From assembly GCA_965637545.1 (NCBI GenBank), contig OZ281500.1:20646001-20710000 (forward strand): DNA of 64,000 bases, read 5' to 3'. The DNA is from Phallusia mammillata (Eukaryota). The position numbers and the translations under genes were made by a program. How positions within the stretch are numbered: the stretch's first letter is position 1; each line of letters begins with the position of its first letter. The notes below the pieces were generated by a model that did not search any database, was not told where the DNA came from, and was given only the letters and a program-made list of their open reading frames with translations. Below, one piece after another: positions 18,631 through 51,665 of this stretch.

Positions 18631-19932
18631 TTACACTATAAAACTTCGGATCTGTTCGGAAACACGTGATCCACACGTCGGGCAATTTACGTGACGCAAG
18701 GCACAACCCGAACAGGCGGAGAGGTGACCGCACGGCAGAAACACTACGCTTGCTGGCTCTCTTCTGCAATCTCTGCACATCCTAGCTTGTCGTAGTTGCT
18801 CGAGCTCATATTCAATAGACGGCGAAAGGAGTTCATCTTCACTACTGGAGCTGCTACTTCTGCCACTGCTCTCGCCTGTACTGTTTACTCTTCTGCGATG
18901 AGATGATTGAGCACTGGGTAATCTCCTTGGAACAGCTGAAGTGGAATTCTCGTTCGCAATTGCCGATGGAAGACGAACTACTGCGTCCAGCAGGTCATCC
19001 AGGCCATGAAAAAGTTCATTACGTTGTTCCACGTGCCTGTTAGAACGTTGGTATGTTAATTTCGGCACTCTTTCGGGAAAAAAGTTAGCCATACCTTTCC
19101 ACTGCTGTTCTTAACAGAACGTCAGCGAAACCCATTCTCCGAAGCGTGGAAACAGATTGAGATTCAGAAAGGTATTCTCTTACTCTTCTGTGGTGATTTT
19201 CCACGAATATCGACTGGCTATGAAAGGTTGAATGATGCGTGTTAAATTTAAACTGCTTCTTATAGCATGGTGTATGTTAAATTTAGAATGTTTTAATCAA
19301 CCTGGTTTGATTGATCGCTGATGGCATGCGATGTACCGTCGTATCAAAAGTATTTGCTTGGCCGTTGGCTTGCGCTGAGGCGACAACATCATGAACGAAC
19401 TGAGGTCCAACAAGTTGCAACAAAAATTCACATCTGAATGCATACAAAAACGTTTATTACACTTTTTGAACTTGAAAGTTTAACAATGTTAATTGCAATA
19501 AAATTTTTGGATTTATAGATTCCAGTCGGACTATCCTGCAATCCACTTTCCCAGACGTTTCCAGGTTAGTAAAAGAGGCAGGAAACTGCATACAAACTCC
19601 AATATCAAATACTAACCTTGGATACCATTTAGAATGCTCTGTTAAAGGATCATCATCCACTAACCAATTACAAAGGCCACCATTGCAATGCCAGCATTTA
19701 ACCCTGTCTGATTCCCCTGCAAAAAACGTCAAACGTGTTTACAAACGTCACAGGAAATATAACATACGGATTTCTGGCACTCACCTATATAAAAGAAACC
19801 AGCTTCGGCCAGTTGCCGCGGTGTAGCTTCTATGTAATGACCTTGCCATTCTCTTCCTGGTGTGTTAAATGTAGCCAATCTTGCTTCAATACTTCTCAAG
19901 CTGGTATGAACCGGTCTTTGCGCAGAAAACAT
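18631..19932 (-). CDS. IAP-1: single BIR (IBM-groove type) - UBA - RING
   Basis: Spliced frame MFSAQRPV...RLATF...LAEAGFFYIG|ESDRVKCWHCNGGLCNWLVDDDPLTEHSKWYPR|CEFL...|...RRMGFADVLLRTAVER|...CRDCRREPASVVFLPCGHLSACSGC...CPTC...SFIV*. The 5' end is uncertain. Confidence 0.88.
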
Positions 19933-20208
19933 TGTATTTTTACTTGCAATCAACTTCTATGTCAACTGAATATACCAAAGGTTTAAGACTTACTCTTGCA
20001 CTCACGATTAAACGTTTTGCAAAAAAAACGAACATGATATACTCAATATACAAACTAAAATATGGAAAACTACATTCGTCCCTTTGCACTGCGCTGACCT
20101 TCTGTTGGTGAATGCCAAGCTTCCTTATTTGGAAGAACAATACAACTGGTACCGGCTTGCCCTTTGGTGCTTAACCGACGCGTTAGCTTTTTACTTCGGT
20201 GAAAAAAA

Positions 20209-20220
20209 GGGGAAATTCCC
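20209..20220. promoter_or_regulatory. NF-kB-like site GGGGAAATTCCC upstream of IAP-1
   Basis: Matches GGGRNNYYCC; ~280 bp upstream of the ATG at 19932. Confidence 0.4.
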
Positions 20221-21424
20221 TGGTGTTTTTGGTCAAAAAAACTGCTGACGCGAACTGTGTCGAACCGCAACGTAACGCGAACCAATAGCAATGACTAATG
20301 AGCCCGTTGTTCGCACTCAAACATGTCAAAAAACAAAACTTTTAAAGGGATATACGTCATAAGTTTTGATTTCGAGTTGATTTCGCTAATGAACACATGG
20401 TGAAACAACTGCCCTGAACAATCGCCATGCCGTAAGTAGCTGTTACAACTTTGTAGAGCGCAAAAACAGTGGAAGGCATCATTGGTGAAACTGAATTCGG
20501 CGCACTTCTGAGTGAAACACGACTTAACTTATGGATACGTGGGACCAATCGAGAGGGCCCTAGAATGAGGCTATCTTGACGATCAACCACTGAATTATCT
20601 TTGCAAAAAAGAGAAGTTGGTTAAGTTAATTGTAATGACCAAATTGAATCGCTTATAGCTATAGTGAATACACAGTGTAAAATTCGACCACCCAAAAGTT
20701 TCAGTGACAAGAGAGTCAGTGACAAACGAAACTTTGACTCACAAAGCAATTAGCGACAGCTTAACGCTGAACACTAGTTATAGTAAACCATAGTACAACA
20801 GTAACGGGTGTAGTGAATAAATGTTTACCAGACATCGTTTCTTACTTTAATGGCGTTAATCATTACTTTGTGTGATTAAATAAGGGCTGTTGTTTTCCCA
20901 GAAAGACAATTTACTTTGCTCCCTCGAAGTTAACAAATGCGTTTTACGAGCGTGTTTTTACGACGGGCAAAACGAGTTGTTTTTTATTTAAAAAGCTGGC
21001 GCAAGACACAGCAAAAACATATTCTTGTAAGCCGAGCAAACGCTACGATAAAAACACGATAACAAACACACAACATTTGACATGAATAATAATAATTCCA
21101 GCAGCACATGAAAAGAATTAATATCTGGTCATTTTGCTCCCTCATATTAAAAGTTATTATTGTGCGCAACATACAAAAGTTTAGTTTATATCAACACTGT
21201 TTTGTACTAATAGCATTTACTTGTTAGTAGTTTTGTATATATGTCCAGTAGCAGAATAGAAAGTACCACAAAAAACAGCAAGTGCCGCAAGAAAAGTACT
21301 ACTCATAGCAGTATAATAGGAAAATGAACGTTGTGGAACTAGTAAAACCAGTCAGAACTTGTTAATAGAAGCTATGTCTAGAAGGACCGGCACGCGAAGT
21401 GAACTTGTACATTTTTTTACTGGG

Positions 21425-24400
21425 TTAGGGCACCATATTCTCAACAAGGGTTTTACATATTGGGCACTTTTGAGAGCTTTCGCGACAACCGTCACAACTG
21501 GCAAGGTGATGACACGGCAGGAGCATCACCGAAGCTTCCTTCAGTAAGCAAACTTTGCACTGTCGTTCATACTGTAACTGCTGAAGCTCAAATTCGACAG
21601 TGGTGTTCACTGGTATTGTGTTGTCTTCCTCTAGTCGACTGATGGTGTCGCTTTCAACGTGGGTCTCATTCTCTTTTAAACACTCGTCAACCAACTGAAC
21701 TGTGCTGTTAACAGTGGCGTTGTTTTTGCGGCATCTGTAATTATAATTTTTGAATTAATTTTTCTACACCAGGTAAATTTGTAGGACCGGGGAAAAATGG
21801 TATACAAACACTATTTTACTTAAAATCAACAACATGTCAAGCAGGCCAGTAAATTAACCGAACTTGTTGTAATATCAGTTTGACAATGCAATTTTGGAAG
21901 CCGCAATACACAACATGAATGGCCGAGGTGACCAATTTTACCGTGTCAGAGCTTTGCGAATGGTGGCATTCTCAAACCCCAAGTCTTTAACAGCTGCGAC
22001 AATTTCGGATTCTTGTATTTCTTTTTCGATGCTTTCTGCCAGCAGCCGTTCCTCTTCCCTTTGGCACGCTTCTGCCCAGCTGCATAAAAAAAACGCATAA
22101 ATTATTCAAAGGTTTTCGTGCTTTTCGAGTCTTTAAATATCTCAACTCACTTGGTTCCGCAGATATCGTGTCCTTCTCCGTTGTTTACACGACTGACAAA
22201 TTCAGGACCTTGGCATTGTAACAGAAATTCGCAGCTAAAAATACAAGAACGGTTTCGTTAAGACAAGTACATAGCAACCATTTAAGACCCAAACAATCTA
22301 AAAGTAGAATGGGAAGTATGGGCTTCATAAAATGGCTTCCAAAATTTTAAACACTCTTTTTGGTACCATAACTAGTTAAACTAATTTGGATAGAATCAGA
22401 ACATGTTGGCTCATTCCGAAACCTTTTTATTCTGGCTATACCATGCACTGAGGGATGTGTGGCTTATAAATTAACCTGAAGCATATTTACATTTCGACGA
22501 TCCCTATTGACATACCGGGTAATTTCCAATGACAAGCGACCATACTTAACTATTGGCCATACAAGCACGAGACCAAATGAAGTGTTAACAGTTATCAAAG
22601 TTTTTGATTTACTTACTTTGGTGAATGTTTAGCGTGTTCGACCCACGGAACATCGTTACGTTCCCAGTTGTGAAAGCCTTTGTTGCAATACCAGCACTTC
22701 AAACGATCCCTTTCGCCTAAGATTTAAAAGAAACAAATATAAGAGTTGCTCTAAAACACTATTTTCATGTAGCAGTGTAGAAAAACAGAACTAAAAATGA
22801 TTTAGTTCGTAGCTTCTTACTGAGAAGCTTCTATTGATCGTGTTCGAGAAGAACAATTGGCCTTTTCTAACGACAATAAACTTTTATTGCTCTTTACAGA
22901 CACTTAAGATGCCTTTTTAGCGAAATATATTAGTTCTTTGTAAGATTGTCAACTGATCTTGTGTCTTACCAAGAAAGTATAATCCGGCCTGGGCTAGTTC
23001 CTGTGGAGTGGCGTTGATGTGATTAGGCCAATTAAACTTGAACGTTGCCAATCTCGTTCTTTCATCAGCCATGTGTGGATTTTTGGGTGAAGTGCAAGGA
23101 AACGCGTCAACACTTCCTCTTTCCCTATCTTGGTGTGCGCGCGCTGTTGAAAGCGAGTAGCGTGAATGTGCGAAAACTGGCGCATTGGAATGGTTCTTTT
23201 CCACAGCTCTCGTTGACTGTACAACTGACAGCGGAACGTTAAAAGATGGCGCCTGACTGAGGTGTACGGGACCTCGTTGCAGCAGTTCACCAGCGGTCAT
23301 CTTTCGAAGCAGCGGAGAAATGGACGGCTGTGAGCCACTGGTTTTTGGTTGAACAGTAACTGTAGGGGATGGTGTGGTGTCTGTGCACAAAGACATAGAA
23401 ACTGTGATTCACCGAACCCGCCTCAAAAGGAAACCGAATATTAAAAATTCCGGCCGAATCAGACCGAACCTAAAATCCCGTTCTTATGGATGTTTTCAAC
23501 TGAACCTTGTGTTGTTGATGCAAGTCAATTATGACACTCCAAAATCACTTTTACAATGTGTAAGCTTTACTTAACTTCTAATATTTTGCAGACAAGGTGG
23601 CTCGTATTTTTTAAACGCAACAACTATAGTTAGTTCATAATGTTTCATATTGGCGATATTTACGGTTTTGGTATAAATATCACACAACAAAAACAAATTA
23701 AAAACATCGGTTTCGGTCAAATTTTTTAAAAAATGCTGGGGCCGAAACCGAAACATGGGAAACGGCATATTCGGCCGAAATGTTTTGGATAGAAACATCA
23801 AACATGTGTGCACTAAATTTCCCCCATTGTTATCTAACCACCGACAGATGGTAGACGGGGCTAGTAGTTTCTTTTCAGTTTATCACACATTCGCTTACCT
23901 GTGGGTCGGTTAGCTCTGCCTGTATCAGCCGCAAACTGACACTGAATATCATGCCACGACTGCATTCTTTGTTTATCTACTGGTACCCGCATATCTTCCA
24001 CGGCATGACCGCAACTGTTAAATGTAAAACTCCTTTTACAAACATGCAAACATCCAGCACTAAAGCATTCTGCTATAGTTGTACTGTGTCGTTTAGTTCT
24101 GCCTTTTATTCACACAAACATGGCGTAACTATTGAGATATCGGTTGCCATGATTCAGAGCACGATGGCAACACCGAAAGGCTGTTCAATGAGTAACGGTT
24201 TCAAAAATAGTGACAGAAACCAAGTCAATTCACGTTCAAAAACTGACTCTTTAACGAGTCTTTGGAAACGCTCTGTGGAACAATATGGATTTTAGATACA
24301 ATTGTTTTCGACTTACCGATAGCATTTAATGCGGTCTCTGTATCCAGTGTAGTAAAACCCGTTTTGTGCCAATTCTTTGACACTGACAGTTGTTGCGGGA

Positions 24401-24622
24401 AGAAACTTTTGAAATGTAGCAACTCGATATGATTCAACTTCAACGTCTCCTGTAAAAGACAACAGAAAAATGTAAAATCTATAGTTTCGATATTTACACC
24501 CGAAGTGGTGCACAGGTTTAGAATTAATCTATTGTACCTGGAAATATGTAAGTAGTCTCTTGTCCTGGTGGATCATTAGCAAACCTCATCACTCGGCCGT
24601 CAGATGCAACTTGTAAAGCCAT
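21425..24622 (-). CDS. IAP-2: BIR-BIR-UBA-RING with shortened RING tail
   Basis: Exon 1 (24538-24622) MALQVASDGR...YIFPG; BIR1 ...[16 protein letters not shown]|CGH...WHDIQC; BIR2 ...AGLYFLG|ERDRLKCWYC...WVEHAKHSPN|C; UBA KDLGFENATIRKAL; RING CKVC...PCHH...CPIC, ending VENMVP*. Confidence 0.88.
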
Positions 24623-27087: not shown

Positions 27088-29341
27088 TTACACGATATAT
27101 GAAGCTATAGTTTCATCAACTCGACTTTTGCACATTGGACATGTAGTGACGTCAGCTCCACACCTTCGGCAACAAGCAATGTGACCACACGGAAGTAGGA
27201 CAACAGAAGCTTTCTCCTGGTGACATTTCTTGCATTGACGTTCTTCTTCCAGTCGGTAAAGTTGTTCTGCAACGGGACTAATTCTCGATGGGCCACTGGA
27301 GGCAGCAGAGGATGGGTTTAGTTGAGTAGCTGGCTCTTGGCCCTCTGGTGCCTCGTTGGGATGCGCCAATATGTCGTCTATTAGTTGTTCTGCCGTTGTT
27401 ATTTTACAATGTTCCCCGCGAAAGTTACTGCAAATGCAAAATTTTGAATTGACAGCAAATATGGTTTTCTGTATATCAAACCTGGTGTTTCACCACTGTA
27501 TACCTTTCTATGGCAAGGCGAATCTCCGGAAAACCGAAACCTATTTTCACTGCTTCTTTAACAAATTCGGATGAACTCATGAATTTATCCACTTTTTCCT
27601 TCAGCTTTCGTTGTTCCTCTCTAGGGTCGACGATTTGGACTCGACTTGAAGACGAACGCCTGTAAATACCATTAAAGATTAACCGTCTTCGACTGTACAA
27701 TGGTAGAGAAAAAATCCTTACTGTAGTCCAGAGACGGCCGGTTGCAATGTGGGTCCACTGCGTGGGGTTGGACGGTTTAAATTTGGATATTGGGCGACGA
27801 CGTTGTGTACGAATTCGACTCCTTTCTTTTGTAACAAATATTCACACCTAAAAAATGTTGGTATTTATGAGACTGAATATGTTCAAGAGAAAAAATGAAC
27901 TTACGAAGGAAACCACTTTGCGTGTTCAAACCACGGTTCGTCATTTGGGCGCCAGTTTTGCAGACCTCCATTACAGTACCAGCATTTAACTCTATCTGAT
28001 GATCCTGCACAAAAATACACATTGTCATTCCAATTTCGTTTGCACCTTACTACATTGTTGTAAGCAAGTGGTGAAAACAAGACGTTGGGTAAAATACAAT
28101 ACCTAAATAGTAGAGTCCGGCCTCGGCGAACTGTTGAAAACTTGCATTGATTCGGTCTGAGGGCCAGTTGTGACGATTTCCTGTAAACGTGCTCAGTCGG
28201 TCGCTTTCCCTCTTCATGTGACTGTTTACGGGGTCGAGACAGGGAAATAGAGACTCTCGCGCACTGTTAGTGGAGGTCTCGTTGTTTCTCGAAGCCGCTG
28301 GGTCGTCCCGTGAGCGTTCTACAGCACGTGTAGAAGCTACAACACTTGGGGGAGGTGTAGGAAGTGCAGGCTGTGGGGAAGATACTCTGGCAGTTTGTAT
28401 GTGTGCCCGATTGGGTCCATGCATCAAAGCAAGTCCTGCTGGTATTCTGTGTTCCTCATTTTCACTGTGGCGCTGCCTTGTTGCTAATGTTGGCGATAAA
28501 CTTGAGTGACCTGAGCAGATTTAGAATATATAAATTCTTCTGTTTGTATGTTATACATCAGTTTTTTAATACATACATATGGGAATATTTCTAGGCTCCC
28601 TGCCTGAGAGGAACTCACAATCATCATTATGCCAGTTTTGTGATGAAGGGTCGTCATTTAGCGTCCAGTCTTGAACGCTTCCTCCACAGCTAAGAAAGAA
28701 TGTTAAGTAAAAGCACGAGTAATAGTCTTACAAAGGCGGGAAATAACGGCTAAATAGGAGGAAGGCGCTACGCAACATTCATTTACTAAATGAAACACAA
28801 TACAACAGGAAAGAGAAGTGAAACACCGCACAGTTTACTGCACACAACGAAACTAAGTAACTAGTTGATAAAGTTTAAACGCGTAACAGTTCTTTAAGGC
28901 GATAAGATCCATATTATCCCTAATATATGGAAGTTTACGGATATTAAATGTATGAAACTTAAACCACCTAAACGAATTTGCAATTTTGGCCTATATTCAA
29001 GCTATGCATAACATACCTGAAGCATTTTACTCGGTCTTTGTAACCAGTGTAGTAAAATCCGTGAAGAGCGAGTACTCGTGGGTCGACAGGGGAGTAGTTT
29101 GGAAACTTTGCAAAAGTGCCAAGTCGATATGTTTCCCGCTCTGTGTCACCTGCACAAAACATGCCAATTTAGTTATTCTACACTTTGCATTCCTGCCCAA
29201 CTTTCAGTTACTAAGAAGAATAATGCCTAGCCTACCATGCTGCAAAGTACGAAACTTACCTGGTAAAATGTACGAACTACGTTGTCCTGGTGGGTCCCTG
29301 CCAGGCAAAACTGACCTACCATCAAACTCAAGCATTGCCAT
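27088..29341 (-). CDS. IAP-3: BIR-BIR-UBA-RING (8 exons, intact)
   Basis: Exon 1 (29260-29341) MAMLEFDGR...; BIR1 [14 protein letters not shown]|CGGSVQDW...WHNDDC; BIR2 AGLYYLG|[33 protein letters not shown]|CEYL; UBA KIGFGFPEIRLAIER; RING CKKC...CGH...CPMC...SYIV*. All splice phases are compatible. Confidence 0.92.
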
Positions 29342-32004: not shown

Positions 32005-33925
32005 TGACCGTAAGCGCCGCTGTTTGGCAATTTAGTTCGCTTTGTCCAATACTCTAGGTGGCTCCAAAGGTCATCTTGGCCGAATGGTCTGGCGCGCCTG
32101 ACCCATATACATACATAAAAAAAAACTTGATCGGGATTCGTCCCCGGGAGTGTCCTGGGTTCGAACCCCGTGAAAAAAATATATATATAAGATGTGTAGT
32201 TCGGCATTGCGCTGATTGTTTGTGTGATGTTAAACAATAGTTTGCTGATATAAAGCCGGTAATAAAACAAATCTCGTTCCTGTATTATTCGGTTTATCCT
32301 TAGTGAAGTTAAGGTATATAGGATTCATTTACACAAAAAATATTTTTGTAATATAATACCAAACTTACACTTAAATTAAAAAATTAGTTATTGCAACTAC
32401 AGTAATTCCCAATAAAATACTCGAAAACAGTTTCACTGCATACTTCGTTTTTCAAAGTGAGAAAGTGGGAAAATGTTCACACCCAACTGTTACTGGGCAC
32501 ACGTGAAGATTTCACATTTCTAACACAACTTAACTCTGGAAAAGTTTTACCAAACGCGCTATCTTTAACTAAATAAAGTAAGCTTAACCAACCCAAACCA
32601 CCATTGTAGCGGGATCACCGCCCCTAACTTGGTAAACACCAGGTCACCCTGCACTAACGGCTTAGCGCTGAAGCCAAAGTTGATATGGTCACACCGAACA
32701 GGGCCTAAACTAAAACACCTTTAACAAATATGCAAATACAATAACGCTGGATTAAGGCAGAGCGACTTTCAAGTTTTCAATACATCACAACAGAATACAA
32801 CGCTAACACGTTTTTCAACCCCACTCAGAACACTGTGAACAACACGATGCCCAAGCGAGAACTGCCTCAAATCTAACACAAAGCATGCAGCGTTGCCGAA
32901 TTGTTTCGGCAGGCCTGATAAATCGTTCTTATACACCAAGCCTGCATACCTAATTCGTAACTCCCGCACACTGGTTTAGCTTGTGGGCGCTGATTATATT
33001 TAAAACAATGTAAAATCAGAACGTTACACCAAGCACGTGGCAACCCACCACCAATACTGGACACCAACACCAACACGTTTCACGGCGCCCAAAGAAAAAG
33101 CCATATCGTCGACTAGCGACGCTCTTCACATTCCAACGCAATCAACGCTTTACAAACCAATCACCCCTAAGGGAAAGCAGCAAAGGTGTCATACCAACTA
33201 AACGTAACTAAGGTGCCACAACGAAGAAGAATGAAAACAATAAGTGACGGTGACAAAACCACCAAGCCGCTACCACTTTTTTCAACCGCACTGATCTTGG
33301 CGGCCATTTACAATGTGCAAGCACGACACGTCGACGCCCAAATCATTGGTGCGAGACAGCAGTTGACTAGGCAAGCGCATGTAGCGGTACATGAGAACGT
33401 GTCATCACAAAAAATGAAATTCAAATACAAACAAATGTAAAGTTAAATATAGACAAAAGTGTGCGTGTAATAACAATAGTAAATAATATTATGTGAAAAC
33501 AGGTTACATATAAACAAAGAGTGTGAGAAATCAATAGAAATACAACCGTAAAAAAATAAATCGAGGAACCTTTGAAAACATTAACTATTACAAGTGCATA
33601 GATAAGACGAAGTAGATTTAATAACCAAAAGGAAACTAAATAAATAACAGTGATGTTGTGCAATAAAACAAAGAGATTAGCATTGTGTGTACGCGCTCAT
33701 TACAAAAGAAACAATAGTTCCAAACAAGTTATTACCAGCGCAACGTTTTTAAGGCAAACTCTAGCAAGACGGATTCGAGACTCCAAAAAAGTCGCTGGAG
33801 TCAAGTCTTGGTATTGTAATGGTGGTCTTCAGAATTGGGACAGAAATGATGATCCATGGTTTGAACACGCGAAATGGTTTCCAAAGGTTTCCCAACCTTA
33901 ACCGACCAACATCATTTAATGTAAC
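32005..33925 (+). pseudogene. IAP-5-like relic: promoter and intron remnants plus fused BIR fragment
   Basis: Segments resemble 39076-39300 and 40636-40690. 33800-33920 reads [29 protein letters not shown] (first Zn Cys changed to Ser), directly followed by FPNLNRPT in another frame. No BIR1 or RING exons found. Confidence 0.75.
32069..32172 (+). other. tRNA-derived (Pol III A/B-box) element, possible SINE head or tRNA pseudogene
   Basis: A-box-like TGGCCGAATGG (32077) and B-box GGGTTCGAACCCC (32157); related copies at 36791-36848 (partial) and 38958-39060 (inverted). Confidence 0.5.
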
Positions 33926-34231: not shown

Positions 34232-36623
34232 TCAGAACAAGCAAAATATTGTTTCTTCAACAGGACTTTTGCACAATGGACAGGTAGTGACGTCAGCTCC
34301 ACACCTTGGACAACACACAATGTGACCACACGGAAGTAGGACATCAGAAGCTCTTTCCTGGTGACATTTCTTGCATTGACGTTCTTCTTCCAGTCGTTGA
34401 AGTTGTTCTGCAACGGGACTGATTTTCGAGGAGCCGCTGGAGGCAGAAGAGGGTGGGTTTAGTTGATTCCCGGGATCTTGGACCTCTGTTTTGTTGGGGT
34501 GCGCCAATATGTCGTCTGTAAGTTGTGCTAAAGTTGTTATCTGACAATGTTCGCCGTTAAAGTTTCTGAAAAATAAAAAGTGTTTGACATTATTATCTTT
34601 TGGTTTGCAAGCGACTTTCTGTATTACATACCTTAGAATAGCGAGCCGAATGTCCGCAAAACTGAAACCCATTTCAGATGCTTCCTTTGCAAGCTTGGAT
34701 GAACTTAGAAACTGATCAACTTTTTCCTTAAGCTTTCGTTGTTGCTCTCTAGGGTCAAAGATTTCGACTGCACCTCCTAAGTCGTTTTCAGATGACAGGT
34801 GCCTACAAAAAACGGTTTGTTAGCAGTTCGGTCCGCGCAATAATATTCAGCCAACGTCCTTACTGAGGTCCACAGACAACTTCATGCGTGGGTCGACGTC
34901 TTTCCCTCTGCATGTGACTGTTGACAGGGTCGAGACCAGGGAACAACGACTCGCGCGCACCGCTAGTGGAAGTCTCGTTGTAGTTAAAAAACGACGGTTC
35001 GTGGAAAAACGCGCGAGGTGATAAAGCTACATCACTTTGTGGAGGAAAAGAAACAGAGAGTTGTGGAGCAGATACTCCAGCGAACGACAAACGTTGTTGA
35101 CCTGCGTAGATATAGGAGATATAAGCTACTGTTCGTAAGTAACGCAAACAGTTTTGATTATAGTTACTTACGTAATGGAATATTTCTAGGCTCCCTGCCT
35201 GAGAAGAATTCACAGTCATCATTATGCCAGTTTTGTGATGACGGGTTGTCATTTAGAGTCCAGTCCTGTACACTTTCTCCACAGCTAAGAAACAAAGGTA
35301 ATCAAAACACGAGAAATAAAATAACTTCAAAAAATAACGCTATAATATGAACAAATAGCTACACAAAATGCGGGCAAATAAGTTTTAAATAATTAAATTA
35401 TTAATAAACTCATTAGATCGACGGGAATCCTGAAACACTAATGGGTAATGAGATTAAAGCGCAAAAAATAGATAGTCCTTAAAACTAAAGTTTTGAGTGA
35501 CAAACGAAATTCAGCTGCAGCAGTCGCTGTCCAAAGTTAAATAATCCAGTTTTAAACTTCAACAGTTTGGAAGAATGATATTTGCAGGTGATTGAAGGCC
35601 TTCAACCAAGGTACACAAACACACCCAAAGCATTTTACTCGATCTTTGTATCCAGTGTAGTAAAATCCGTGAAAATCCAGTGCTCGTCGTTGTTTACACA
35701 ATAAAATGCGACATGCGTAAACACAATGCGACAGGAAACAGAAGTGAAATACCGTGAAGTTTATCAACAAGAACTAAACTTACTAATTAACTAACTTAGT
35801 CCTGTATGTTAAAACGCGTAACTTAACAGTCTTTAAAGGCGACAAGATATAAAAGTTTTTGAATCTACCTTGGTTTCAGAATACTAAATGTTTAAAACTT
35901 AAACCACCTAAATCGTACAAAAAATACATTTGCAACTTTGGCCCTTAATCAAATTGCACAACGTACCTAAAGCATTTTACTCGGTCTTGGTATCCTGTGT
36001 AGTAAAATCCGTCAAGAGCGAGTGCTCGTGGGTCGACGGGGGCGTAGTTAGGAAACTTTGCAAAAGTGCCAAGTCGATACGTTTCCTGCTCTGTGTCACC
36101 TGGACAAAAACATATCGGCTATTAGTTACTCTACAAATATTGTTTATGAAAACTGACATAACATCATACTCAGTGGTAGGATTCAATTTTTTTTGTCATG
36201 CTAACCGGTTCCCTGATTTCATAAATTTCGTGAGACGATTCTATGAAACCGGTGCAAACCGTCTGAATCCCACCACTGATCATACTCTATGTCCAGCATT
36301 ACTATGAATACTACCAAATATATCTTATTTAGCAAAATATTAATATATACTCTAATCAATGTGTTAATGAAATCGAAAACAACATGCTAACGCTAAACTG
36401 ACGTATATGTGTAGTAGTTTATGCGTTTTTTAAGCATAAAAAAGCATGCAAATTCATTAGTGCAAAAACAAAAATCGTTTTACAGTTATATTGTCGTCCA
36501 TGTTTGTCAACATTTAATGGTTTTTGTTGTGAGGTTTTTTCCTGGCGGAATATAAGCACTGTGTTCACTTGGTGGGTCTCCTCCACATCCAACAACCCTA
36601 CCATTTACTTCGATATTCACCAT
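34232..36623 (-). CDS. IAP-4: BIR1-UBA-RING, second BIR deleted in frame; exon-1 donor mutated (possible pseudogene)
   Basis: Exon 1 (36542-36623) MVNIEVNGR...YIPPG is followed by GA instead of GT. BIR1 exons at ~35967-36100 and ~35170-35285 are intact. The linker reads NSHMQRE-RRRPTHEVVCGPQ| directly into the UBA exon. RING ends IFCLF*. Confidence 0.7.
36171..36278. mobile_element. hAT-type MITE in IAP-4 intron 1
   Basis: TIRs CAGTGGTAGGATTCA / TGAATCCCACCACTG; perfect 8-bp TSD atcatact. Confidence 0.88.
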
Positions 36624-37983: not shown

Positions 37984-38590
37984 CTAGGTTTTCATTTCAG
38001 GTCTATTTAAGTTTGGAAACTTGGCAACAATATTGTAGACGAATTGTGGGCCCCTGCGTTGCAACAGGAATTCACACCTATTAAAAGATTTAGGTTCTTT
38101 TTATTTACAGGAAAATGTTTAAAAGGGACTTACGTTGGAAACAATTTGGCATGTTCACTCCATGGATCATCGTTCTTATGCCAGTTCTGCAAACAACCGT
38201 TGCGGTACCAACATTTTAACCGATCCGGTTCACCTGGTTTAGGAAAAAGTCCCTAAATAACTTTTCCGGTTCACCTGGTTTAGGAAGAAATCCCTAAATA
38301 ACTTTTGTTGGTGCTAGATCAAACTTAGGAACACTATACACGGACTTGAAAATTAATTTAATCATGAACATGTTGTAAATAATACTGGGGTGAAAACAGA
38401 AAATGCAAACGGTTTCGTGAAGTAATTGCGCCAATATCACAAACAGTGTGTCGCGAATAAACCTTGCGCAGAGGTGGGTGGATTGCCTTCTTTACGAGTT
38501 AGTTCTTGTGTTCCAGGTTGATTCTCAACAGACTGCGTCTCCCGTGGGCCGTGACCAGACGAAGAAACAGGTGATAGACGTAGTTGTGCG
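37984..38590 (-). pseudogene. Relic of the 3' half of IAP-7
   Basis: Paralogous to 50452-51130. The BIR N-half exon is deleted, WYC is changed to WYR (Zn ligand lost), a ~39-bp tandem duplication crosses the acceptor (38225-38305), and the same ...T-stop (ACC TAG) is retained. Confidence 0.8.
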
Positions 38591-39913: not shown

Positions 39914-42020
39914 ATGTCGGACATTGAGGTAGATGGCAGAATTTTAAATTCGACCAGAGAACCGCCAGGTCAGCACAGCGTTTATATTCCACCGGGTAAG
40001 TTATGTTGTGCAGTAAACAGTTGAAGTTTGTAAGCATATATTGTTCTATTTCAGTTGAAAGAAATCGCGAAGTTCACAGACTGGCGACTTTTGCACGTTT
40101 TCCGCAGTTTGCACCAGTCAACCCATGTGCACTTGCAAGAAATGGATTTTATTTTACCGGTTACAAGGACCGAGTAAAATGTTTCAGGTTTGTGGGGATG
40201 GTTAAATGTACGATTTACTTTTTTCAAGCTTATTTAAATTCGTATTTTACAGTTGCGGCCAAACAGTTGACTCTTGGGCGATTGGCGACGACCCAACGTC
40301 TTTAAGGTGGCATGATCGTGATTGTCCGTTTGCAACAGGAAATGATACCGAAAACGTTGCAATTGAAAGTAAGTTTTTCTACATAGTCAACATTTAACAT
40401 GTAAGTTTAGCCTTATAAAACCGTACACAAATTACTCAAGTATAGAGCGACAGATGATAAGCGCCAATTGAAACGTTTATTTACGTAACAGAAACATTAA
40501 TTTCGCCTATTTGGAAACCATCGTCAGTTTTCATCTTATTCAAATGGAATGATAAGAAATAATACTGATGTTAAAAAGGTAACCTGATATCTCTTGCACA
40601 AGCACACAGAAATGTTCACATTCCAAAAAGGTTGCTTACACCGGACAGTTGCTGTCCACACATGAAGATTTCACAATGCTAACAAAACTTTTGAAATCTG
40701 CACAGGGTTTCACACGAGACATGTTGGAAATTCCACGCCGCCACAAACTTTAAGAATTCCAAACAGGTTAACACCAGCGGCTGCAACGTCTTCAAGGGAA
40801 ACTCCAATAAGACGGAGTCGAGATTCCGATGAAGACACCGAAGTCGCACGTTACGAAACAATTTTCACCTGCCCGGACCCCACAAATCCCCACATGCGAG
40901 ATGAAGCTCGTCGGTTGCAAACGTTTGTTGATAATCTGAGAAATTGGCCTTCACACAGAATCGCAGCAACCCCCGATCAAATGACCAAGGCTGGACTTTA
41001 TTATCTCGGTAAGTGTGACTGAATAGTATCAATTCGCCAGTTGCTGTTTCCAAATTGTATCCGAATTTATTTACAAATCTCATAAAGGTTGGTTTATAAT
41101 TTAGCTTGTCATTTTTAGGCCAGAGGGATCGAGTAAAGTGTTGGTATTGTAATGGAGGTCTGCAGAATTGGGACAGGAATGATGATCCATGGTTTGAACA
41201 CGCGAAATGGTTTCCAAGGTAGGATTTCACTATAAGCTGACACACGAAATTCTTTAACATTTTTTTTATAATTTTCATAGTTGCGAGTTTTTGCTTCAAA
41301 AGAAAGGACCAGCTTATGTTCACAACGTTGTGGCCCAGTTTCCCAATCTCAACCGACCAACACCAGTTAATGCTGCCAACAGACAGAATTTGCCACAAGT
41401 TGCATCCGGTTTGCAGAGGTCAAGATCAAACATGCCAATTATTGTTGATCCGAGAGAAGAAGTGAGAAAAAGGGAAAGAAAAGTTGATGAAGAAATGCGA
41501 AGATCGCCTCTTGTGGCCAAAGCAAAGGGGATGGGATTCAGTGAAAAAGAAATTCGCTGCGCATTGTTAAGGTAAATAAAATAATAATTTACAAACAATT
41601 TTTTTTGGTGTTCAACACCAATATAAACATCTACCGTTAAGAAAAAGTCATTCTTTTTTTTCTAATTGATATAGGAAGCATGAAGAAAGCGAAGAGTTTT
41701 GTTCGAATCTTGAAAGTTTCGTTGAATGCATTCTATCGAATCCGGATCCGATTCCAGAAGATCGTGATCTAACTTTGGATGCTGGAGGTTCAACAAACTT
41801 GGAAGGCGAAGTAAATAGAGGAGGAGACCAGCAAACGATCAAGGAACTTGACCGATTACAAGCATCAAGGACATGTCGGATTTGTCGGACATCTCAGGCA
41901 AATATTGTGTTACTTCCGTGCGGTCATATCGCCTGTTGTGAAGGGTGCAGTAAGGGATTGAAAAAATGCCCTGTTTGCAAAAGTTTTGTGCGTGAAACTG
42001 TGAAATCGTACATTGTGTGA
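39914..42020 (+). CDS. IAP-5: BIR-BIR-UBA-RING (7 exons, intact, opposite strand to the other intact IAPs)
   Basis: Exons 39914-39995, 40055-40187, 40253-40368, 40706-41008, 41119-41218, 41281-41570 and 41675-42020 join in frame. All Zn ligands are present; ends SYIV*; TATAAAG at 39857. Confidence 0.93.
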
Positions 42021-45359: not shown

Positions 45360-45700
45360 TTTTGGAATAGTGACAATAAACGTGAAGTAATAATATACAA
45401 AATTACACACATGAACTTTTTTAAGGTTGTACGAGACTATTATCGTGGCTTTTTTCTAACATTCGTTTTTAGGCACATATTAAACAATTAAGGAATTGAT
45501 GATTTATAGGTGTAACCTTTTGGAATAGTGACAATAAACGTAAAGTAATAAGATAAGATACAAAATTTACAAAACATAACTTGCACCTTTTTAAATGTTT
45601 GAATTTTCACTTTTTTGAGGTTGTATGATAAAATATCATCGTGGCAAATTTTCTAACATACGATTTATAGGCACAAAATTAAACAATAAAGGAATTAATA
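45360..45700. repeat. Tandem duplication of the IAP-6 terminal codons and 3'UTR
   Basis: 45360-45500 resembles 45517-45700 (tggaatagtgacaataaacgt...; the minus strand reads INSLIV* versus INSFIV*). Confidence 0.7.
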
Positions 45701-48700
45701 GCTTCACGCACAAGGGAATTACAAATAGGGCAGTGGCGTAAATCTTTTGAGCAGTTAGCGCATGTTGCTAGATGACCGCAGGGAAGTAGCACAACTGAGG
45801 CATTGGATCTTTCACACACTTTACAAGATCTAAGTTTTTTAAGATTATGTAGCTCTTGCGCGACTGACGTTTCGCCGCTTGCTGAGGAACTAGAGGCGGT
45901 TGGAATTTCTGACAATGAGGCCTGATTTGATGTGGGAATTTGGCCTTGATTTTCCAACATGTAATTCACCATACTTTCGAAACTGGGATATGGGGCGTCA
46001 GCTTCTTCAAACCTCCTGCAAGAAATAAAATGAAAAAATTTAAACACCAAAAAATAATTCTATATGAAAACAGACAAATTCTTAAAACGTTACCAAATGT
46101 TTTGTCGATAAACCTTTTCACCAAAACAAAAGCCAAGGAAAATCTCCAGCTAGAATTGGTTTTTCATTTCTTAACATTGGTGCTTTATTTAGATATTTAC
46201 CTCAACATTGCAAAACGAATTTCCGTTTCGCTAAAACCCATGGTCTTGGCTTCTTCCACAAATGACGATCTTCGCATCTCTTCATCAACTTTTCTTTCCC
46301 GTTTTCTTACTTCTTCTCTCGGATCAACAATGATTGGCATGTTTGATCTTGACCTCTGCAAACCGGATGCAACTTGTGGCAGATTGAGAGCACTTGCACT
46401 ATTAACTGGTGTTGGTCGGTTGAGGTTGGGAAATTGGGCCACAACGTTGTGGACATAAGCTGGTCCTTTCTTTTGAAGTAAAAACTCGCAACTGAAAAAA
46501 TTAAAATAAATTAAATTGATGAAGAATTTTGTGTGTCAGCTTATAGTGAAATCTTACCTTGGAAACCATTTTGCGTGTTCAAACCATGGATCATCATTCC
46601 TGTCCCAATTCTGAAGACCTCCATTGCAATACCAACACTTGACTCGATCCCTCTCGCCTAAAAATGACAAACAATGATATCAAATTTTCCAAAGATAATT
46701 CAGTTTTGATTAAGATGCTTCGCAAAATTAGACAGGAATTGGGGCCCAAACCCCGAAACCCAGCCCGAAGATGATTGTTTTAAAAAAGCAAGGTCTTAAA
46801 AATACCCGAAAGTTGGTAAAAATGCGGCAAAAATGAGTGTAAAATCAGGCCCAAAAAGCCCAACTTACAACTTTAAACCGTAAGCCACTTACCAAGATAA
46901 TAAAGTCCAGCGTCGACCATTTGTTCGGGTGTTGCTGCGATTCGGTGTGAAGGCCAATTTCTCAGATTATCGACAAACGTTTGTAACCTGTGTGCTCTGT
47001 TCCTCATGTGGGGGTTTACCGGATCAGCGCAGGGGAAAAGGTTCTCGGTTTCGTCAACTTCCCTTGGTCGTTCTATTGATCTAGGTCTGACCCTTTGTGC
47101 TGACGTCGAGGAAGTCGAGACTGCTGGGTTTAAATCGCGTCTAACTTCGTGACTTCTACTTTGCCGATTTTCTGTTGTTGTTGTTTCTCGTGTCTGACGT
47201 AGTGGGTTTCCACCTAATCAGGAAGTAATATAATGAAAGGAAATGATTCATTTGCGTACGAACGCGGGGAAATCTTGGGCGAAATCAGTCAATCAGATTT
47301 CGGTTCATTCATATGCAAACTCAAGATAATATTGGGACGGCACCAGTTTTGTATCGATATGAAACTTCGTTACACCACCACCAATAGTATAGATGTCTTG
47401 TTGCTTTCGGTGCTGGTGTAGAACTGAAACTGCTGCTAATGAACTGCTGCTAGGCGTACTTACTGTTATTTACCCTAATATGGTGACCTGTATACGACGT
47501 CGAACCGTCGGTATAAAAATACAATTGCTGAAGGGGCTTTTTAAATTTGATATTATGCCTGGAACCAACAGCTTATATAGAAGTAGTTTAGTACCTAGCA
47601 TTTCCAAGCAATTCTCCACACGTGAATGCCACAGAATATGTTACGCGTAAATGCCTATGTTGGTCAGGTCACATGACATGAATAGCGAGACAGATATAGA
47701 CATATATATATACGGTTAGTAGATATTGACGTCATATACAGGCGGGGCAATAGCTCCGTTAAGCCTTTATATTTAAAGCTTTTTCACCTGCCCTTGTTTG
47801 TCTTACGTTTAATCACGTGCAAATGCTCATAAAAGTCTTATTTGGGTTTTTTAACTTACCAATCGGAACGTTGTCGGTGCTCTCGCCTGCAATTAGCTGA
47901 CAGTCTTCGGCGTGCCATCTTTCCCATGTTGGGTCATCGCCAACAACCCAGTTTTCCACAGTCAAACCACACCTACAAATAAATGACAAGTTACATATAA
48001 GATGAACTTAATTCATAACTGGGATCAGCCCTGAAGCGTTCATGCAGACCATGTTGCACATAAGGCTTAAAGTCATTAAATGCCAATCCAGGCGAAACAC
48101 AATAGCTTTGAAAGGAACGCCCACGTTCAACCATTTGTTATTTTGACAACCGATATAATTAGTCCAAAGCAAGTGGGTTAAATTTAAATGTGGGCGAGAC
48201 GATACGCAACGTCGCATACAGGTCATTGGGGAAATGAACTAACTTACTGAAAGCATTTCACACGGTCCTTGTATCCGGTGTAGAAAAATCCATGCTTGGC
48301 AAGTGCACACGGGTTTACAGGGGAAAACTCCGGAAATTTCGCAAATGTGGTGAGTCGATAAATTTCTCGAAATGTGTCACCTTAAAACAATCAAAAAGGA
48401 TTACATTGCATTTCCTATGACGAATATTGTTCTTGAATGGACACGAGTCAAAGTTCAAAAAATACGTTTGTGCTGCGTCATGTTTTGCTGACGACACCCA
48501 AACTCAAGATGACGCAAGGGTTTGCCAACTAAGCGCTCGACGCACTACATTATGTGTGTCACGTTCACAATTTCCCAATTATTTATGCAACAAACAACAT
48601 CAACACAGTGGGTAAAAAGTTAAATTGGTCATTTCAGGATATCAGTCTAGAACACGTTCTTTAGGAATATTATAATAAACAGAATATCAAAAATGTGTCG

Positions 48701-49514
48701 ATTTACGGTTTAGAATTCTCTAACGTTTAAATGACTATACACAACAAATCAAAGTTATATGCGGCCTTAAAGAACAAGCCAGAAACCCGGCCCTAGCACG
48801 ATTTTTTGAAAGCAAGTAATTAGACCCGAAAGTTTAATTACTCAGCGTTAAAATACAATATGACGGAAAAGTTAGGCCCGAACTAAGATTGTTTCTTTTT
48901 GACTAAAGTCCGAACCGAAGCCCCATACAACCTTACATCAAATGACAAAAACATACAAACTAATACACATGTCAAAAAACAAAGTTATCGGAACGTCATA
49001 CTTTACACATTATGTATACATATGTATTGGCATGTCTGTTTCTCATGAAATTATTACTAATTAAAACAGTTGGGTAAAAAACGATAACAGAAGCTTAAAA
49101 CATGCGACGACAAACATGACGCCAATTCAAACAAGAGAACATTGTACCTGATGAAATGCATTAAAATGTGATGGCACAAGTCAAAACTCCGTTTAAAGTG
49201 TTCAACTCCAATTACGTGTTTCAATCAATCGTAACAAAATAAAACATCACACTGCAGAAAACAATTACAACTGTTGTAAACGGAGTAGTGCCAACGTGAA
49301 CACATGTAGAATAAAATCTTTTGCCTCTATACTTTAAATTTAGTTTTAACTTGTTCTTTTTATGAAAAAAGCTTTAATACTTGGTTTGGCGATCATGTTC
49401 GTCGACATAATATATTAAGTTGTATTATTTACCTGGCGGAATATAAGCACTGCGTTGACCTGGTGGGTCGCGTCCGCTTTCTACAACCCTACCATCAACT
49501 TCGATATTCAACAT
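45679..49514 (-). CDS. IAP-6: BIR-BIR-UBA-RING (7 exons, intact)
   Basis: Exon 1 (49433-49514) MLNIEVDGR...YIPPG; BIR1 exons ~48253-48385 and ~47860-47975; linker/BIR2 ~46895-47215 and ~46560-46660; UBA exon ~46203-46492; RING CKVC...CGH...CPIC...SFIV*. Confidence 0.92.
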
Positions 49515-49659
49515 AGAACAACTTGGCTTGGCAGATAAAACGTCTGTATTATACGTATTTGTATAAGCTCACGCTGTTTTCACGTTGCTACGTTACTATT
49601 CAAGCTCGTTTCGCTACGTTGAGGTTCGCGTCTGTATGCTCACGCTAAAAGCGCCCTCG

Positions 49660-49702
49660 TATTTATAGCCAGACAGCATTGTGACGTCAGAAACGTCACG
49701 TG
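49660..49702 (-). promoter_or_regulatory. IAP-6 core promoter: TATA box, CRE palindrome and E-box
   Basis: TATAAATA on the minus strand (49660-49667), TGACGTCA (49682-49689), CACGTG (~49697). Confidence 0.55.
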
Positions 49703-50451
49703 TAATCTCGAGATACCGCGAAACCGCTGGAAAAATGAGCCGGAAATCGCGGAATGAAAACTTTTCCATTTATTTTCCATGCCAGGTGTTATGCATGACT
49801 TAAACTTGATTTAAAAGTTTACTGCAACTAAAGAAATGAACAAATGAATATGGCAACATTATACAGCATGAGCGTGCTCCTTTCTCTTTCTATTCTCTTT
49901 GCGAGCGCGACGTAAAACGTCTGTCGATCAGCTGAGCCCGATACGTTGTCATGCTCCAGTGGTAAATATTTTGAGAGAACGTTAAAAATACTTGTTTTAT
50001 TGCTGGTTAATCGCATAGGAGAAAATCATTCAAGAAAACATTATGTAATGCAGCGTTCTTTAACTTCAACACTATAAATGGTTCGAGTAGCAAAGAAAAC
50101 GTTTAAATTTAAATGTGTAATAAAGAGGAAAAAATATGGTCAGCATTAGTTGAGTAAAACTGTATATGTAATATAAACAATGGTTCTAAATAAAAAATAA
50201 AAGATAAAACAGGAAATACGGATCAAGATATCAACAAGCATACTCAGTAGATAGTCAAAACATTTACATAAATAATAAAGTAACGTCATTTTTAAATAGA
50301 AAAGAAACTTCAGATTTATAGAAATTAAAGTAAAAAAAATGATTCGATTGAATACTGCACATACGACGATCTCTATTTTCGGTTTTGTTTTCTGATCATT
50401 GATGTTGTGTTTTTTTGTATCAAATTAAGGAACAATGTGCATTTCCGTGAA

Positions 50452-51665
50452 CTAGGTTCTTGGTTCAGGCCTATTTAAGTTTGGAAACTTGGCAACAATA
50501 TTGTGGACGAATTGTGGGCCTTTGTGTTGCAACAGGAATTCACACCTATTAAAAGATCTGGGTAATTTTTATTCAGGGGAAAGTGTTTAAAATGAACTTA
50601 CGTTGGAAACCATTTGGCATGTTCACTCCATGGATCATCATTCCTATGCCAGTTCTGCAAACCACCGTTGCAGTACCAACATTTTACCCGATCTCTTTCA
50701 CCTGTTTACGTTTAAAAATACATAAATCACGTTTGTTGGTGCTAGAGTCAAACTTACCAAGGTAAAATAGTCCAGCCTCTGCCATCTGCTTTGGAGTTGC
50801 TCGAATCCTGTGTGAAGGCCAGTTGTGGTGATTTTTAATGAAGGTTTGCTCACGGGATTTTACATCCCGCATTGCCGGATTTCGAGGTTCCAAACAAGGA
50901 AAAAGATTCCCAGAATCGCGGGAGCTGTGGGGAACTGGGATGAAAATAGAAAATGGACACAGTTTCGTTAGGAATTGCGCCAATATCACAAAAGATGTGG
51001 CGCAAATAAACCTCGCGCAGAGGCGGGTTGATTGCCATCTTCACGAGTCAGTTCTTGTGCTCCAGGTTGTATTTCAACAGACTGCGTGGGAAGTCTCCCA
51101 TGATCAGTGGGTGAAGAAGCAGGTATTGGACGTAATTGGCGAAATAATGCGTCTGAAAAAGATTTAAAAAGCAAGCAAGCTAGACACACCAAGTATGGTA
51201 ATTTAAACGTCGTACTTAGCGGTACGTTAGTTTCATCAACTCCATTTGCAAAGTCGCAATCATTTTGGTGCCAGCGTCGATCTGCTGGGTTGTCGCTTGC
51301 AATCCAATCCTGTACGCATTGGCCGCAGCTAAAATCACAACTTGTATAGTAAATGAAAATAAATGTGTACAACTGTAAACTGCACCTGAAACATTTGACT
51401 CTGTCCTTGTAACCAGTGTAATAAAATCCGTTTTCTGCCAACTGATATGGATTTTGTACATTGCTTCTAGAAAACTTCAAAAACGTTGAAACTCGGTATG
51501 ATTCGCGTTCCTTGTTTCCTGCTCGAATATGAGGTTTAAAATGTTATTTCGGACATTCTGTCTAATATAACTTGTTGAACCTGGTGGTATGTAGAAGCTC
51601 TTTTGACCTGGCGCATCACTACCAAGCGAAATATTACGACCATCTGTTACAATTTGGTCGTCCAT
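50452..51665 (-). CDS. IAP-7: BIR-BIR only (no UBA, no RING)
   Basis: [10 protein letters not shown]...YIPPG|[13 protein letters not shown]...[15 protein letters not shown]|CGQCVQDW...WHQNDC|linker with an extra 77-nt intron (50935-51011)|...AGLFYLG|[17 protein letters not shown]...EHAKWFPT|[30 protein letters not shown]. Confidence 0.85.

What the first reader, a model, noticed from the sequence alone, without database searches (positions are those of the whole stretch)
18631..51665. IAP array that samples a combinatorial set of domain architectures
Seen: four full BIR-BIR-UBA-RING genes (IAP-2, 3, 5, 6), one lacking the first BIR (IAP-1), one lacking the second (IAP-4), one lacking UBA-RING (IAP-7), and two relics, all within 33 kb. 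The second BIR has the LxxW..DDPW.EH.KW IBM-groove signature of cIAP/XIAP BIR3; the first does not. Known: IAP expansions occur in ascidians and bivalves. Inference: a birth-and-death apoptosis/immunity locus producing full ligases, single-BIR variants and ligase-dead binders that could regulate one another.
Basis: partly seen in the sequence, partly recalled or inferred. Interest (0 to 1): 0.75.

Follow-up and report, generated by a model that had tools for sequence, protein, structure and literature searches.

The report
Sea-squirt IAP gene cluster with variants
A 33-kb stretch, probably of a sea-squirt genome, holds seven neighbouring copies of a cell-death-regulator (IAP) gene plus broken fragments, some copies having lost a domain through partial duplication or deletion; such clusters are already described in other animals, so this one is real but ordinary.

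Summary
I found one further small exon fragment.

- **Full genes:** IAP-2, 3, 5 and 6 are BIR-BIR-UBA-RING.
- **IAP-1:** it has the second-type BIR, UBA and RING, with an intact reading frame. No BIR1 remnant lies upstream.
- **IAP-7:** it has two BIRs and a stop about 80 nt into exon 6. RNA contigs from three runs show three of its five introns spliced and end at that stop. None joins to IAP-6. Introns 2 and 3 were not seen spliced.
- **IAP-4:** this copy of IAP-3 has a roughly 0.43-kb in-frame deletion of BIR2. Its first splice donor is destroyed (GT to GA), and amino-acid change is about twice as fast as in IAP-3. It is probably a dying gene.

Repeat structure points to birth and death by unequal recombination. 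The IAP-7/IAP-6 pair was duplicated as a unit, giving relic 2 plus IAP-4. IAP-4 is a hybrid. IAP-5 and IAP-6 share a conversion tract.

The birth-and-death part is supported. Cross-regulation between copies is untested, and IAP-1 and IAP-4 have no RNA evidence.

A 2026 survey of metazoan IAPs describes closely similar clusters in bumblebees and ants, and reports 18 IAPs in Ciona. This is a new member of a known kind. The scan noted another IAP cluster elsewhere in this genome.

The parts
18631..19932 (-). IAP-1 (A): one BIR of the second type, then UBA and RING. Exons are about 19932-19785, 19716-19617, 19433-19337 or 19302, 19213/19217-19095 and 19036-18631.
   Evidence: tblastn; splice models and UBA 'MGF' exon; open 290-303 aa frame; no BIR1 remnant upstream; no in-frame phase-1 acceptor upstream of the ATG. 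No RNA evidence.
21425..24622 (-). IAP-2 (B): full BIR-BIR-UBA-RING gene of 8 exons. It is a divergent copy: BIR1 lacks the W and DDP motifs, and the RING tail is 4 residues shorter.
27088..29341 (-). IAP-3 (C): full BIR-BIR-UBA-RING gene of 485 aa and 8 exons, with an extra 62-nt intron inside exon 6.
33798..33920 (+). Relic 1: a BIR2 exon-5 fragment, 94% identical to IAP-5 and IAP-6, joined directly to the interior of exon 6. The first zinc Cys is changed to Ser.
34232..36623 (-). IAP-4 (D): a copy of IAP-3 with an F-like 5' end. A roughly 0.43-kb in-frame deletion removes BIR2, and the exon-1 donor is GT>GA. Probable pseudogene.
35597..35687 (-). Extra partial copy of the BIR1a exon inside IAP-4 intron 2.
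37984..38586 (-). Relic 2: a decayed paralogue of IAP-7 holding BIR2b with CxxC changed to CxxR, the start of exon 6 with the same TAG stop, and part of intron 3.
39914..42020 (+). IAP-5 (E): full BIR-BIR-UBA-RING gene of 456 aa and 7 exons.
45679..49514 (-). IAP-6 (F): full BIR-BIR-UBA-RING gene of 458 aa and 7 exons. No RNA contig lay on its exons in the three RNA runs.
50452..51665 (-). IAP-7 (G): BIR-BIR with no UBA or RING, modelled as 233 aa in 6 exons. It is transcribed, and introns 1, 4 and 5 are confirmed by RNA joints.
41106..41584 (+). Conversion tract of IAP-5 (exon 5, intron 5, exon 6), 87.7% identical to 46185-46670 of IAP-6. The other exons of the pair are 60-73% identical.

Best explanation
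This is a lineage-specific tandem array of XIAP/cIAP-like ubiquitin ligases, probably in an ascidian genome, that evolves by birth and death. The ancestral gene has a short conserved N-terminal exon, a divergent first BIR, an IBM-groove-type second BIR, a UBA and a C-terminal RING. Unequal recombination between copies duplicated genes and gene pairs. The domain-variant copies are by-products of that process. IAP-7 arose from an incomplete duplication whose breakpoint lies about 80 nt into exon 6. It has been kept as a transcribed two-BIR protein without the ligase domain. IAP-1 is an old copy that has only the second BIR plus UBA and RING. IAP-4 is a recombinant copy of IAP-3 that lost BIR2 through a deletion and is now decaying. 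Shown here: the anatomy, the duplication history, and the transcription and partial splicing of IAP-7. Inferred from family knowledge: the full copies bind IBM-bearing partners through BIR2 and ubiquitylate them through RING dimers, and IAP-7 can bind such partners but cannot ubiquitylate them.
For: Seven genes with conserved intron positions and open frames. IAP-3 and IAP-4 are colinear at 75-87% through exons and introns. The region upstream of IAP-4 plus relic 2 (36491-38586) matches IAP-7 plus the region upstream of IAP-6 (49386-51138). IAP-7 and relic 2 share the same TAG, and homology of IAP-7 to IAP-5 and IAP-6 ends just before it. For IAP-7, RNA contigs of three runs carry GT-AG joints at 51517/51580, 50699/50756 and 50543/50600. 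These joints are absent from the DNA run. The contigs end at 50453, inside the stop codon, and none joins to IAP-6. In the BIR2 of IAP-7, pN is 0.17-0.22 while pS is saturated at 0.82-0.88, and its tree branch is short. For IAP-4, the donor is GA, the deletion is in frame, 33 polarised amino-acid changes fall on its lineage against 16 on IAP-3 with equal third-position changes, and its UBA-RING branch is 0.30 against 0.08. The UBA profile hits the XIAP UBA (2kna) at E = 4e-4. Published precedents for such clusters are in PMC13159474.
Against: Introns 2 and 3 of IAP-7 were not seen spliced. In run X1, unspliced contigs cover 50923-51158 and 51168-51355 at a depth similar to the exons, so part of the RNA may encode only BIR1. 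There is no RNA evidence at all for IAP-1 or IAP-4. The pairwise dN/dS of 0.36 between IAP-3 and IAP-4 is below the value of about 0.6 expected if IAP-4 had been neutral since duplication, so it was constrained for a time or still has some function. RNA came from one study and from assembled contigs, which show presence only. The species name rests on earlier agents' notes.
Confidence: 0.78

Rival explanations
1. One reading: the array is a selected regulatory module. Full ligases, single-BIR variants and a ligase-dead binder act on one another, for example through RING heterodimers, competition for IBM partners, or IAP-7 acting as a decoy.
For: IAP-7 is transcribed while neighbouring IAP-6 is not detected in the same runs. 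IAP-7 BIR2 is highly conserved. The RING-less form already existed when the IAP-7/IAP-6 pair was duplicated as a unit. IAP-1 keeps all its motifs. Ants keep a comparable RING-less plus full pair in tandem (PMC13159474).
Against: No interaction data of any kind exist here. The second copy of the pair (relic 2 plus IAP-4) is decaying in both members. IAP-4, the 'BIR1-only' state, is probably dead. Partial duplication and deletion explain each architecture without invoking selection for a set.
Confidence: 0.15
2. All three variant copies are non-functional debris of duplication, and only the four full genes matter.
For: IAP-4 has a broken donor and accelerated protein change. IAP-7 RNA in X1 includes unspliced introns 2 and 3. 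IAP-1 has no RNA evidence, and its last exon found no relatives in the word search.
Against: IAP-7 and IAP-1 are old, with synonymous sites saturated against every other copy. Both still keep open frames, canonical splice sites, all zinc ligands and conserved tails. Relic 2 shows how a dead copy of IAP-7 looks by comparison.
Confidence: 0.05
3. The variants are artefacts of gene modelling, and the missing domains are supplied by splicing to neighbouring genes' exons: IAP-2 BIR1 to IAP-1, and IAP-7 to the IAP-6 UBA-RING.
For: Each pair lies on the same strand, 0.9-1.5 kb apart.
Against: No joint links IAP-7 to IAP-6. IAP-7 contigs run unbroken into its stop codon, and IAP-6 exons are uncovered in the same runs. 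Upstream of the IAP-1 ATG, no acceptor has the phase needed to continue from a phase-1 exon-3 donor with an open frame.
Confidence: 0.02

Closest known systems
Bombus terrestris IAP cluster (PMC13159474)
   Same: A tandem cluster in which a two-BIR-plus-RING gene was duplicated. One copy lost about 300 bp, which created a one-BIR-plus-RING architecture. Both forms sit side by side.
   Different: That cluster is in an insect and is DIAP-like. No UBA is noted in the passages I read. Here the deleted copy (IAP-4) also carries a broken splice donor and looks moribund.
Formicidae DIAP1-like gene with a tandem two-BIR, RING-less partner (PMC13159474)
   Same: A RING-less two-BIR gene lies next to its full-length parent. 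The cause given is incomplete duplication rather than later loss. This parallels IAP-7 next to IAP-6.
   Different: The ant pair is conserved across a whole family. Conservation of IAP-7 in other ascidians was not tested here.
Ascidian IAP expansions: Ciona intestinalis with 18 IAPs (PMC13159474) and Botrylloides violaceus with more than 10 BIRC2-like genes (PMC10542563)
   Same: Lineage-specific IAP amplification in tunicates, with divergent BIR groups.
   Different: In the passages I read, those papers report gene counts for ascidians, not the structure of any ascidian IAP locus. Phallusia was not found by word search in the survey's main text.
Human XIAP (BIR3-UBA-RING part) and the cIAP1/cIAP2 tandem pair
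   Same: BIR2 here matches BIR3-type domains best. The UBA region matches the XIAP UBA. The RING is C-terminal with a conserved hydrophobic tail.
   Different: There are two BIRs rather than three, and no CARD. The first BIR has unusual zinc-ligand spacing, and a short conserved N-terminal exon precedes it.
Bivalve IAP expansions (Crassostrea, Mercenaria, Mizuhopecten; cited in PMC13159474)
   Same: Tandem duplication is a major driver there, and the copies vary in BIR and RING content.
   Different: Those families are far larger and belong to a different phylum.

Membership tests
IAP (BIR-containing) proteins | At least one BIR domain with Cys-Cys-His-Cys zinc ligands | tested here: met
   Pfam BIR hits on separate exons (46.8, 35.5, 18.5 and 15.7 bits). 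The second BIR has canonical CxxC-x16-H-x6-C in IAP-1, 2, 3, 5, 6 and 7. The first BIR keeps four ligands but with the spacing CxxC-x18-H-x3-C.
RING-type IAP E3 ligases (XIAP/cIAP/DIAP class) | C-terminal C3HC4 RING | tested here: met
   Six RING motifs by regex. Pfam zf-C3HC4_3 at E = 1e-10 to 1e-14 on three of them. Met for IAP-1 to IAP-6 and not met for IAP-7, which stops before the UBA.
RING-type IAP E3 ligases (XIAP/cIAP/DIAP class) | E3 ligase activity and RING dimerisation | not testable with these tools
   Needs biochemistry. The conserved C-terminal tail (S-Y/F-I-V) is present in IAP-1, 3, 5 and 6, altered in IAP-4 and shortened in IAP-2.
UBA-containing IAPs (XIAP, cIAP1/2, DIAP2) | UBA domain between the last BIR and the RING | tested here: met
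   A profile of six paralogues gives the XIAP UBA (2kna) as best solved-structure match at E = 4.3e-4, with UBAP1 UBA next. Pfam UBA was matched only weakly, by 2 of 6 members, best E = 0.045. Only the first two helices were tested, because the domain is split by an intron.
Type II (IBM-groove) BIR, as in XIAP BIR3 | Groove residues (L307, W310, E314, W323 by XIAP numbering, from my own knowledge) and binding of IBM peptides | tested here: inconclusive
   The sequence GGLQNW..DDPW.EHAKW keeps Leu, Trp, an acidic residue and the second Trp. The best solved relatives are BIR3-type domains. Binding was not tested.
XIAP or cIAP orthologue | Three BIR domains, plus a CARD in cIAPs | tested here: not met
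   Only two BIRs are present, and about 50 residues separate UBA and RING, so there is no CARD. I file this as XIAP/cIAP-like, not as an orthologue.
Birth-and-death tandem gene family | Tandem paralogues of differing age together with pseudogenes or relics at one locus | tested here: met
   Divergence ranges from dS of about 0.2-0.6 (IAP-3 against IAP-4) to saturated. Three relics and one probable pseudogene are present.

The most novel reading that the evidence does not exclude
The unit of duplication and of function is a two-gene module: a RING-less two-BIR gene placed directly upstream of a full BIR-BIR-UBA-RING ligase. IAP-7 would be a kept, separately expressed antagonist or buffer of its neighbours. 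This would make the locus a chordate counterpart of the ant DIAP1-like plus two-BIR pair.
Probability: 0.15. Interest if true: 0.5.

Novelty: new member of a known kind. Interest (0 to 1): 0.3.

Why it matters
The locus gives a compact, readable example of how IAP domain architectures change. Incomplete duplication, in-frame deletion, hybrid genes and gene conversion all occur within 33 kb of a chordate genome. It also supplies one transcribed RING-less IAP that could be tested as a natural ligase-dead binder. Ascidians are reported to lack caspase-9 and Apaf-1 (PMC13159474), so how their expanded IAPs are used is an open question. The general principle, however, has already been described for other animals.

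Tried and rejected
- **Word searches:** the protein database returned one hit at 41% identity for the long open frame of IAP-7, and nothing for the last exon of IAP-1. The database seems to hold no transcript-derived proteins of this species in the reachable length range, so these searches could not test expression.
- **First search call:** it failed on coordinate order.
- **Structure prediction:** AlphaFold2 without an alignment on P0001, an intronless BIR1-type protein from another assembly, gave mean pLDDT 43.5. It was unusable, so no fold search was made.
- **Solved structures for BIR1:** the search with the C-terminal half of BIR1 gave nothing significant.
- **Poly(A) signals:** I looked for AATAAA or ATTAAA downstream of each stop. 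Only IAP-4 and IAP-6 had one (ATTAAA), about 310-390 nt downstream; the other five, IAP-7 included, had none, which is uninformative.
- **Large profile search:** I did not run it, because the family is not in doubt.
- **IAP-1 as an alternative 3' end of IAP-2:** rejected on reading-frame phase.
- **IAP-7 spliced on to IAP-6:** rejected on RNA contigs.
- **Spliced protein models:** these could not be handed to the search or fold tools, because they have no single reference and I did not type long sequences.
Full report
**What is there.** The window has no N and is 33-44% G+C in 2-kb windows. Motif scans in six frames found six IAP-type RING motifs and the split halves of many BIR domains.

I took the exons of the + strand gene at 39914-42020 as queries. 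A tblastn with them mapped seven genes and two relics between 18631 and 51665, and nothing convincing elsewhere in the window. Pfam confirms BIR and zf-C3HC4_3 on the separate exons.

Splice modelling used GT-AG introns and required open frames. It places the introns at the same positions in all copies. The assembled models all give single open reading frames:

| Gene | My label | Strand | Length | Architecture |
|---|---|---|---|---|
| IAP-1 | A | - | 290-303 aa | BIR (second type), UBA, RING |
| IAP-2 | B | - | 452 aa from the ATG at 24622 | BIR-BIR-UBA-RING |
| IAP-3 | C | - | 485 aa | BIR-BIR-UBA-RING |
| IAP-4 | D | - | 356 aa | BIR1, UBA, RING; BIR2 deleted |
| IAP-5 | E | + | 456 aa | BIR-BIR-UBA-RING |
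| IAP-6 | F | - | 458 aa | BIR-BIR-UBA-RING |
| IAP-7 | G | - | 233 aa | BIR-BIR only |

A profile search of every intergenic stretch found no hidden BIR1 upstream of IAP-1 and no UBA or RING downstream of IAP-7. I add a third fragment, a partial BIR1a exon copy in IAP-4 intron 2 at 35597-35687.

**The domains.**
- **Second BIR.** It has canonical CxxC-x16-H-x6-C spacing. Its central exon is closest to NAIP BIR2, ML-IAP, cIAP1 BIR3 and XIAP BIR3 among solved structures. It keeps the Leu, Trp, acidic residue and second Trp that line the IBM groove of XIAP BIR3 (residue roles are from my own knowledge).
- **First BIR.** Its N-terminal half is a clear Pfam BIR (35.5 bits). Its C-terminal half is weak (15.7 bits) and has no significant solved relative. 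Every copy shows CxxC-x18-H-x3-C.
- **BIR1 in another assembly.** The same spacing occurs in P0001, a 126-aa protein from a different public assembly. There exons 1 to 3 are fused without introns.
- **UBA.** The call rests on a profile of the six paralogues. Its best solved match is the XIAP UBA, 2kna, at E = 4.3e-4. Pfam UBA is only weak.
- **CARD.** There is none, because UBA and RING are about 50 residues apart.

**How the array was built.** A self-comparison shows four things.
- **IAP-3 and IAP-4** are colinear at 75-87% identity through exons and introns.
- **A duplicated unit.** The stretch upstream of IAP-4, including relic 2 (36491-38586), matches IAP-7 plus the stretch upstream of IAP-6 (49386-51138). 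A RING-less gene plus a full gene was therefore copied as one unit.
- **IAP-4 is a hybrid.** Its exon 1 and promoter region resemble IAP-6, while its body from exon 2 onward resembles IAP-3.
- **IAP-5 and IAP-6 are inverted paralogues.** A tract covering exon 5, intron 5 and exon 6 is 95%, 84% and 87% identical. Their other exons are 60-73% identical, and their last exons are 37% identical as protein. I read this tract as gene conversion.

IAP-7 and relic 2 share the same TAG. The homology of IAP-7 to IAP-5 and IAP-6 ends a few codons before that stop, about 80 nt into exon 6. The RING-less form therefore arose by incomplete duplication and predates the duplication of the unit.

Relic 1 is 94% identical to exon 5 of IAP-5 and IAP-6, and is joined directly to the interior of exon 6. 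It has lost a zinc Cys. Relic 2 has CxxC changed to CxxR.

**Are the variants alive?** Synonymous sites are saturated for most pairs, so most duplications are old.

*IAP-7.* In BIR2, pN is only 0.17-0.22 against pS of 0.82-0.88, and the BIR2 tree branch is the second shortest after IAP-6. This indicates purifying selection.

One RNA-like run held 45% of the sampled words of the IAP-7 stretch. I laid three such runs and one DNA run on 45760-51759. The results were:
- **Spliced joints.** All three RNA runs carried contigs with GT-AG joints at 50543/50600 and 50699/50756, which are introns 5 and 4.
- **Intron 1.** One run carried the joint 51517/51580.
- **DNA control.** The DNA run covers the region unspliced.
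- **Stop codon.** The RNA contigs run without a break to 50453, inside the stop codon.
- **IAP-6.** No contig joins to IAP-6, and IAP-6 exons are uncovered in these runs.

Two caveats apply. Introns 2 and 3 were not seen spliced, and in run X1 unspliced contigs cover them (50923-51158 and 51168-51355). Retention of intron 3 would stop the frame at 50986. Assembled contigs also show presence, not absence or level.

*IAP-1.* It keeps all zinc ligands, the MGF motif of the UBA and the conserved S-F-I-V tail, despite saturated divergence from every other copy. No acceptor upstream of its ATG could continue in frame from a phase-1 exon-3 donor. It has no RNA evidence.

*IAP-4.* Five lines of evidence point to decay:
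- **Splice donor.** Its exon-1 donor reads GA where all other copies read GT.
- **Deletion.** A roughly 0.43-kb deletion fuses exon 4 to the tail of exon 6a in frame and removes BIR2.
- **Amino-acid change.** Its lineage carries 33 polarised amino-acid changes against 16 for IAP-3. Some of these columns lie at the misaligned deletion junction; without them the count is about 23 against 13. Third-position changes are equal, at 20 and 19.
- **RING.** Within the RING, a conserved Val is changed to Asp, and the C-terminal tail is altered.
- **Tree branch.** Its UBA-RING branch is 0.30 against 0.08 for IAP-3.

The pairwise dN/dS with IAP-3 is 0.36. IAP-4 was therefore constrained for part of its history. 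I call it a probable, fairly recent pseudogene.

**Comparison with what is known.** A 2026 survey of 2,843 metazoan IAPs (PMC13159474) reports the following:
- **Bumblebee.** A bumblebee cluster has six genes with two architectures, created by loss of about 300 bp.
- **Ants.** Ants carry a RING-less two-BIR gene in tandem with its full parent, explained by incomplete duplication.
- **Ciona.** Ciona intestinalis has 18 IAPs.
- **Tunicate apoptosome.** Tunicates have lost caspase-9 and Apaf-1.

Botrylloides violaceus has more than ten BIRC2-like genes (PMC10542563). The word 'Phallusia' does not occur in the survey's main text, and my searches found no paper on this locus.

Earlier agents of this scan name the genome as Phallusia mammillata, and they noted a second IAP cluster elsewhere in it. 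I did not verify the species.

**Verdict.** Birth and death is well shown. Of the three variant architectures, one is transcribed and constrained (IAP-7), one is intact but has no RNA evidence (IAP-1), and one is probably dying (IAP-4). Mutual regulation between copies is speculation. This is a new member of a known kind of locus, and I score its interest at 0.3.

Noticed in passing
window 41106-41584 and 46185-46670: IAP-5 and IAP-6 are inverted paralogues. They are 95%, 84% and 87% identical over exon 5, intron 5 and exon 6, but only 60-73% identical in their other exons and 37% identical as protein in the last exon. This looks like a gene-conversion tract between convergent copies.
   Followed up: partly
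window 40187-40368 (IAP-5 BIR1) and the same exon in IAP-2, 3, 4, 6 and 7; L001:10001-10381: The first BIR has zinc-ligand spacing CxxC-x18-H-x3-C instead of the canonical x16-H-x6. The same spacing occurs in a 126-aa protein from another public assembly, where exons 1 to 3 are fused without introns. Folding that protein without an alignment failed (pLDDT 43.5).
   Followed up: partly
window 48010-48051: A 42-base element in IAP-6 intron 2 has a summed contig depth of about 48,000 in the DNA run, against about 105 around it. It also sits in RNA contigs with unrelated flanks. It is a very high-copy repeat.
   Followed up: no
window 39914-39995 and the first exons of IAP-2, 3, 4, 6 and 7: A short first exon of 27-28 codons, containing DGR and PPGQ..YIPPG, is conserved in six of the seven genes. 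It is absent from IAP-1. Its role is unknown.
   Followed up: no
window 8542-11977 and 13136-16601: An inverted duplication of about 3.5 kb at 87% identity lies to the left of the array.
   Followed up: no
window 50505-50525: The DNA run carries a contig with four differences (G>A and three T>C) in the last exon of IAP-7. The RNA contigs match the window. This is probably a second haplotype.
   Followed up: no
window 31991-32365 and 38948-39345; 3070-3153 and 36195-36278; 60807-61138: Short dispersed and tandem repeats at 72-86% identity lie between and beside the IAP genes. They may have served as recombination substrates.
   Followed up: no
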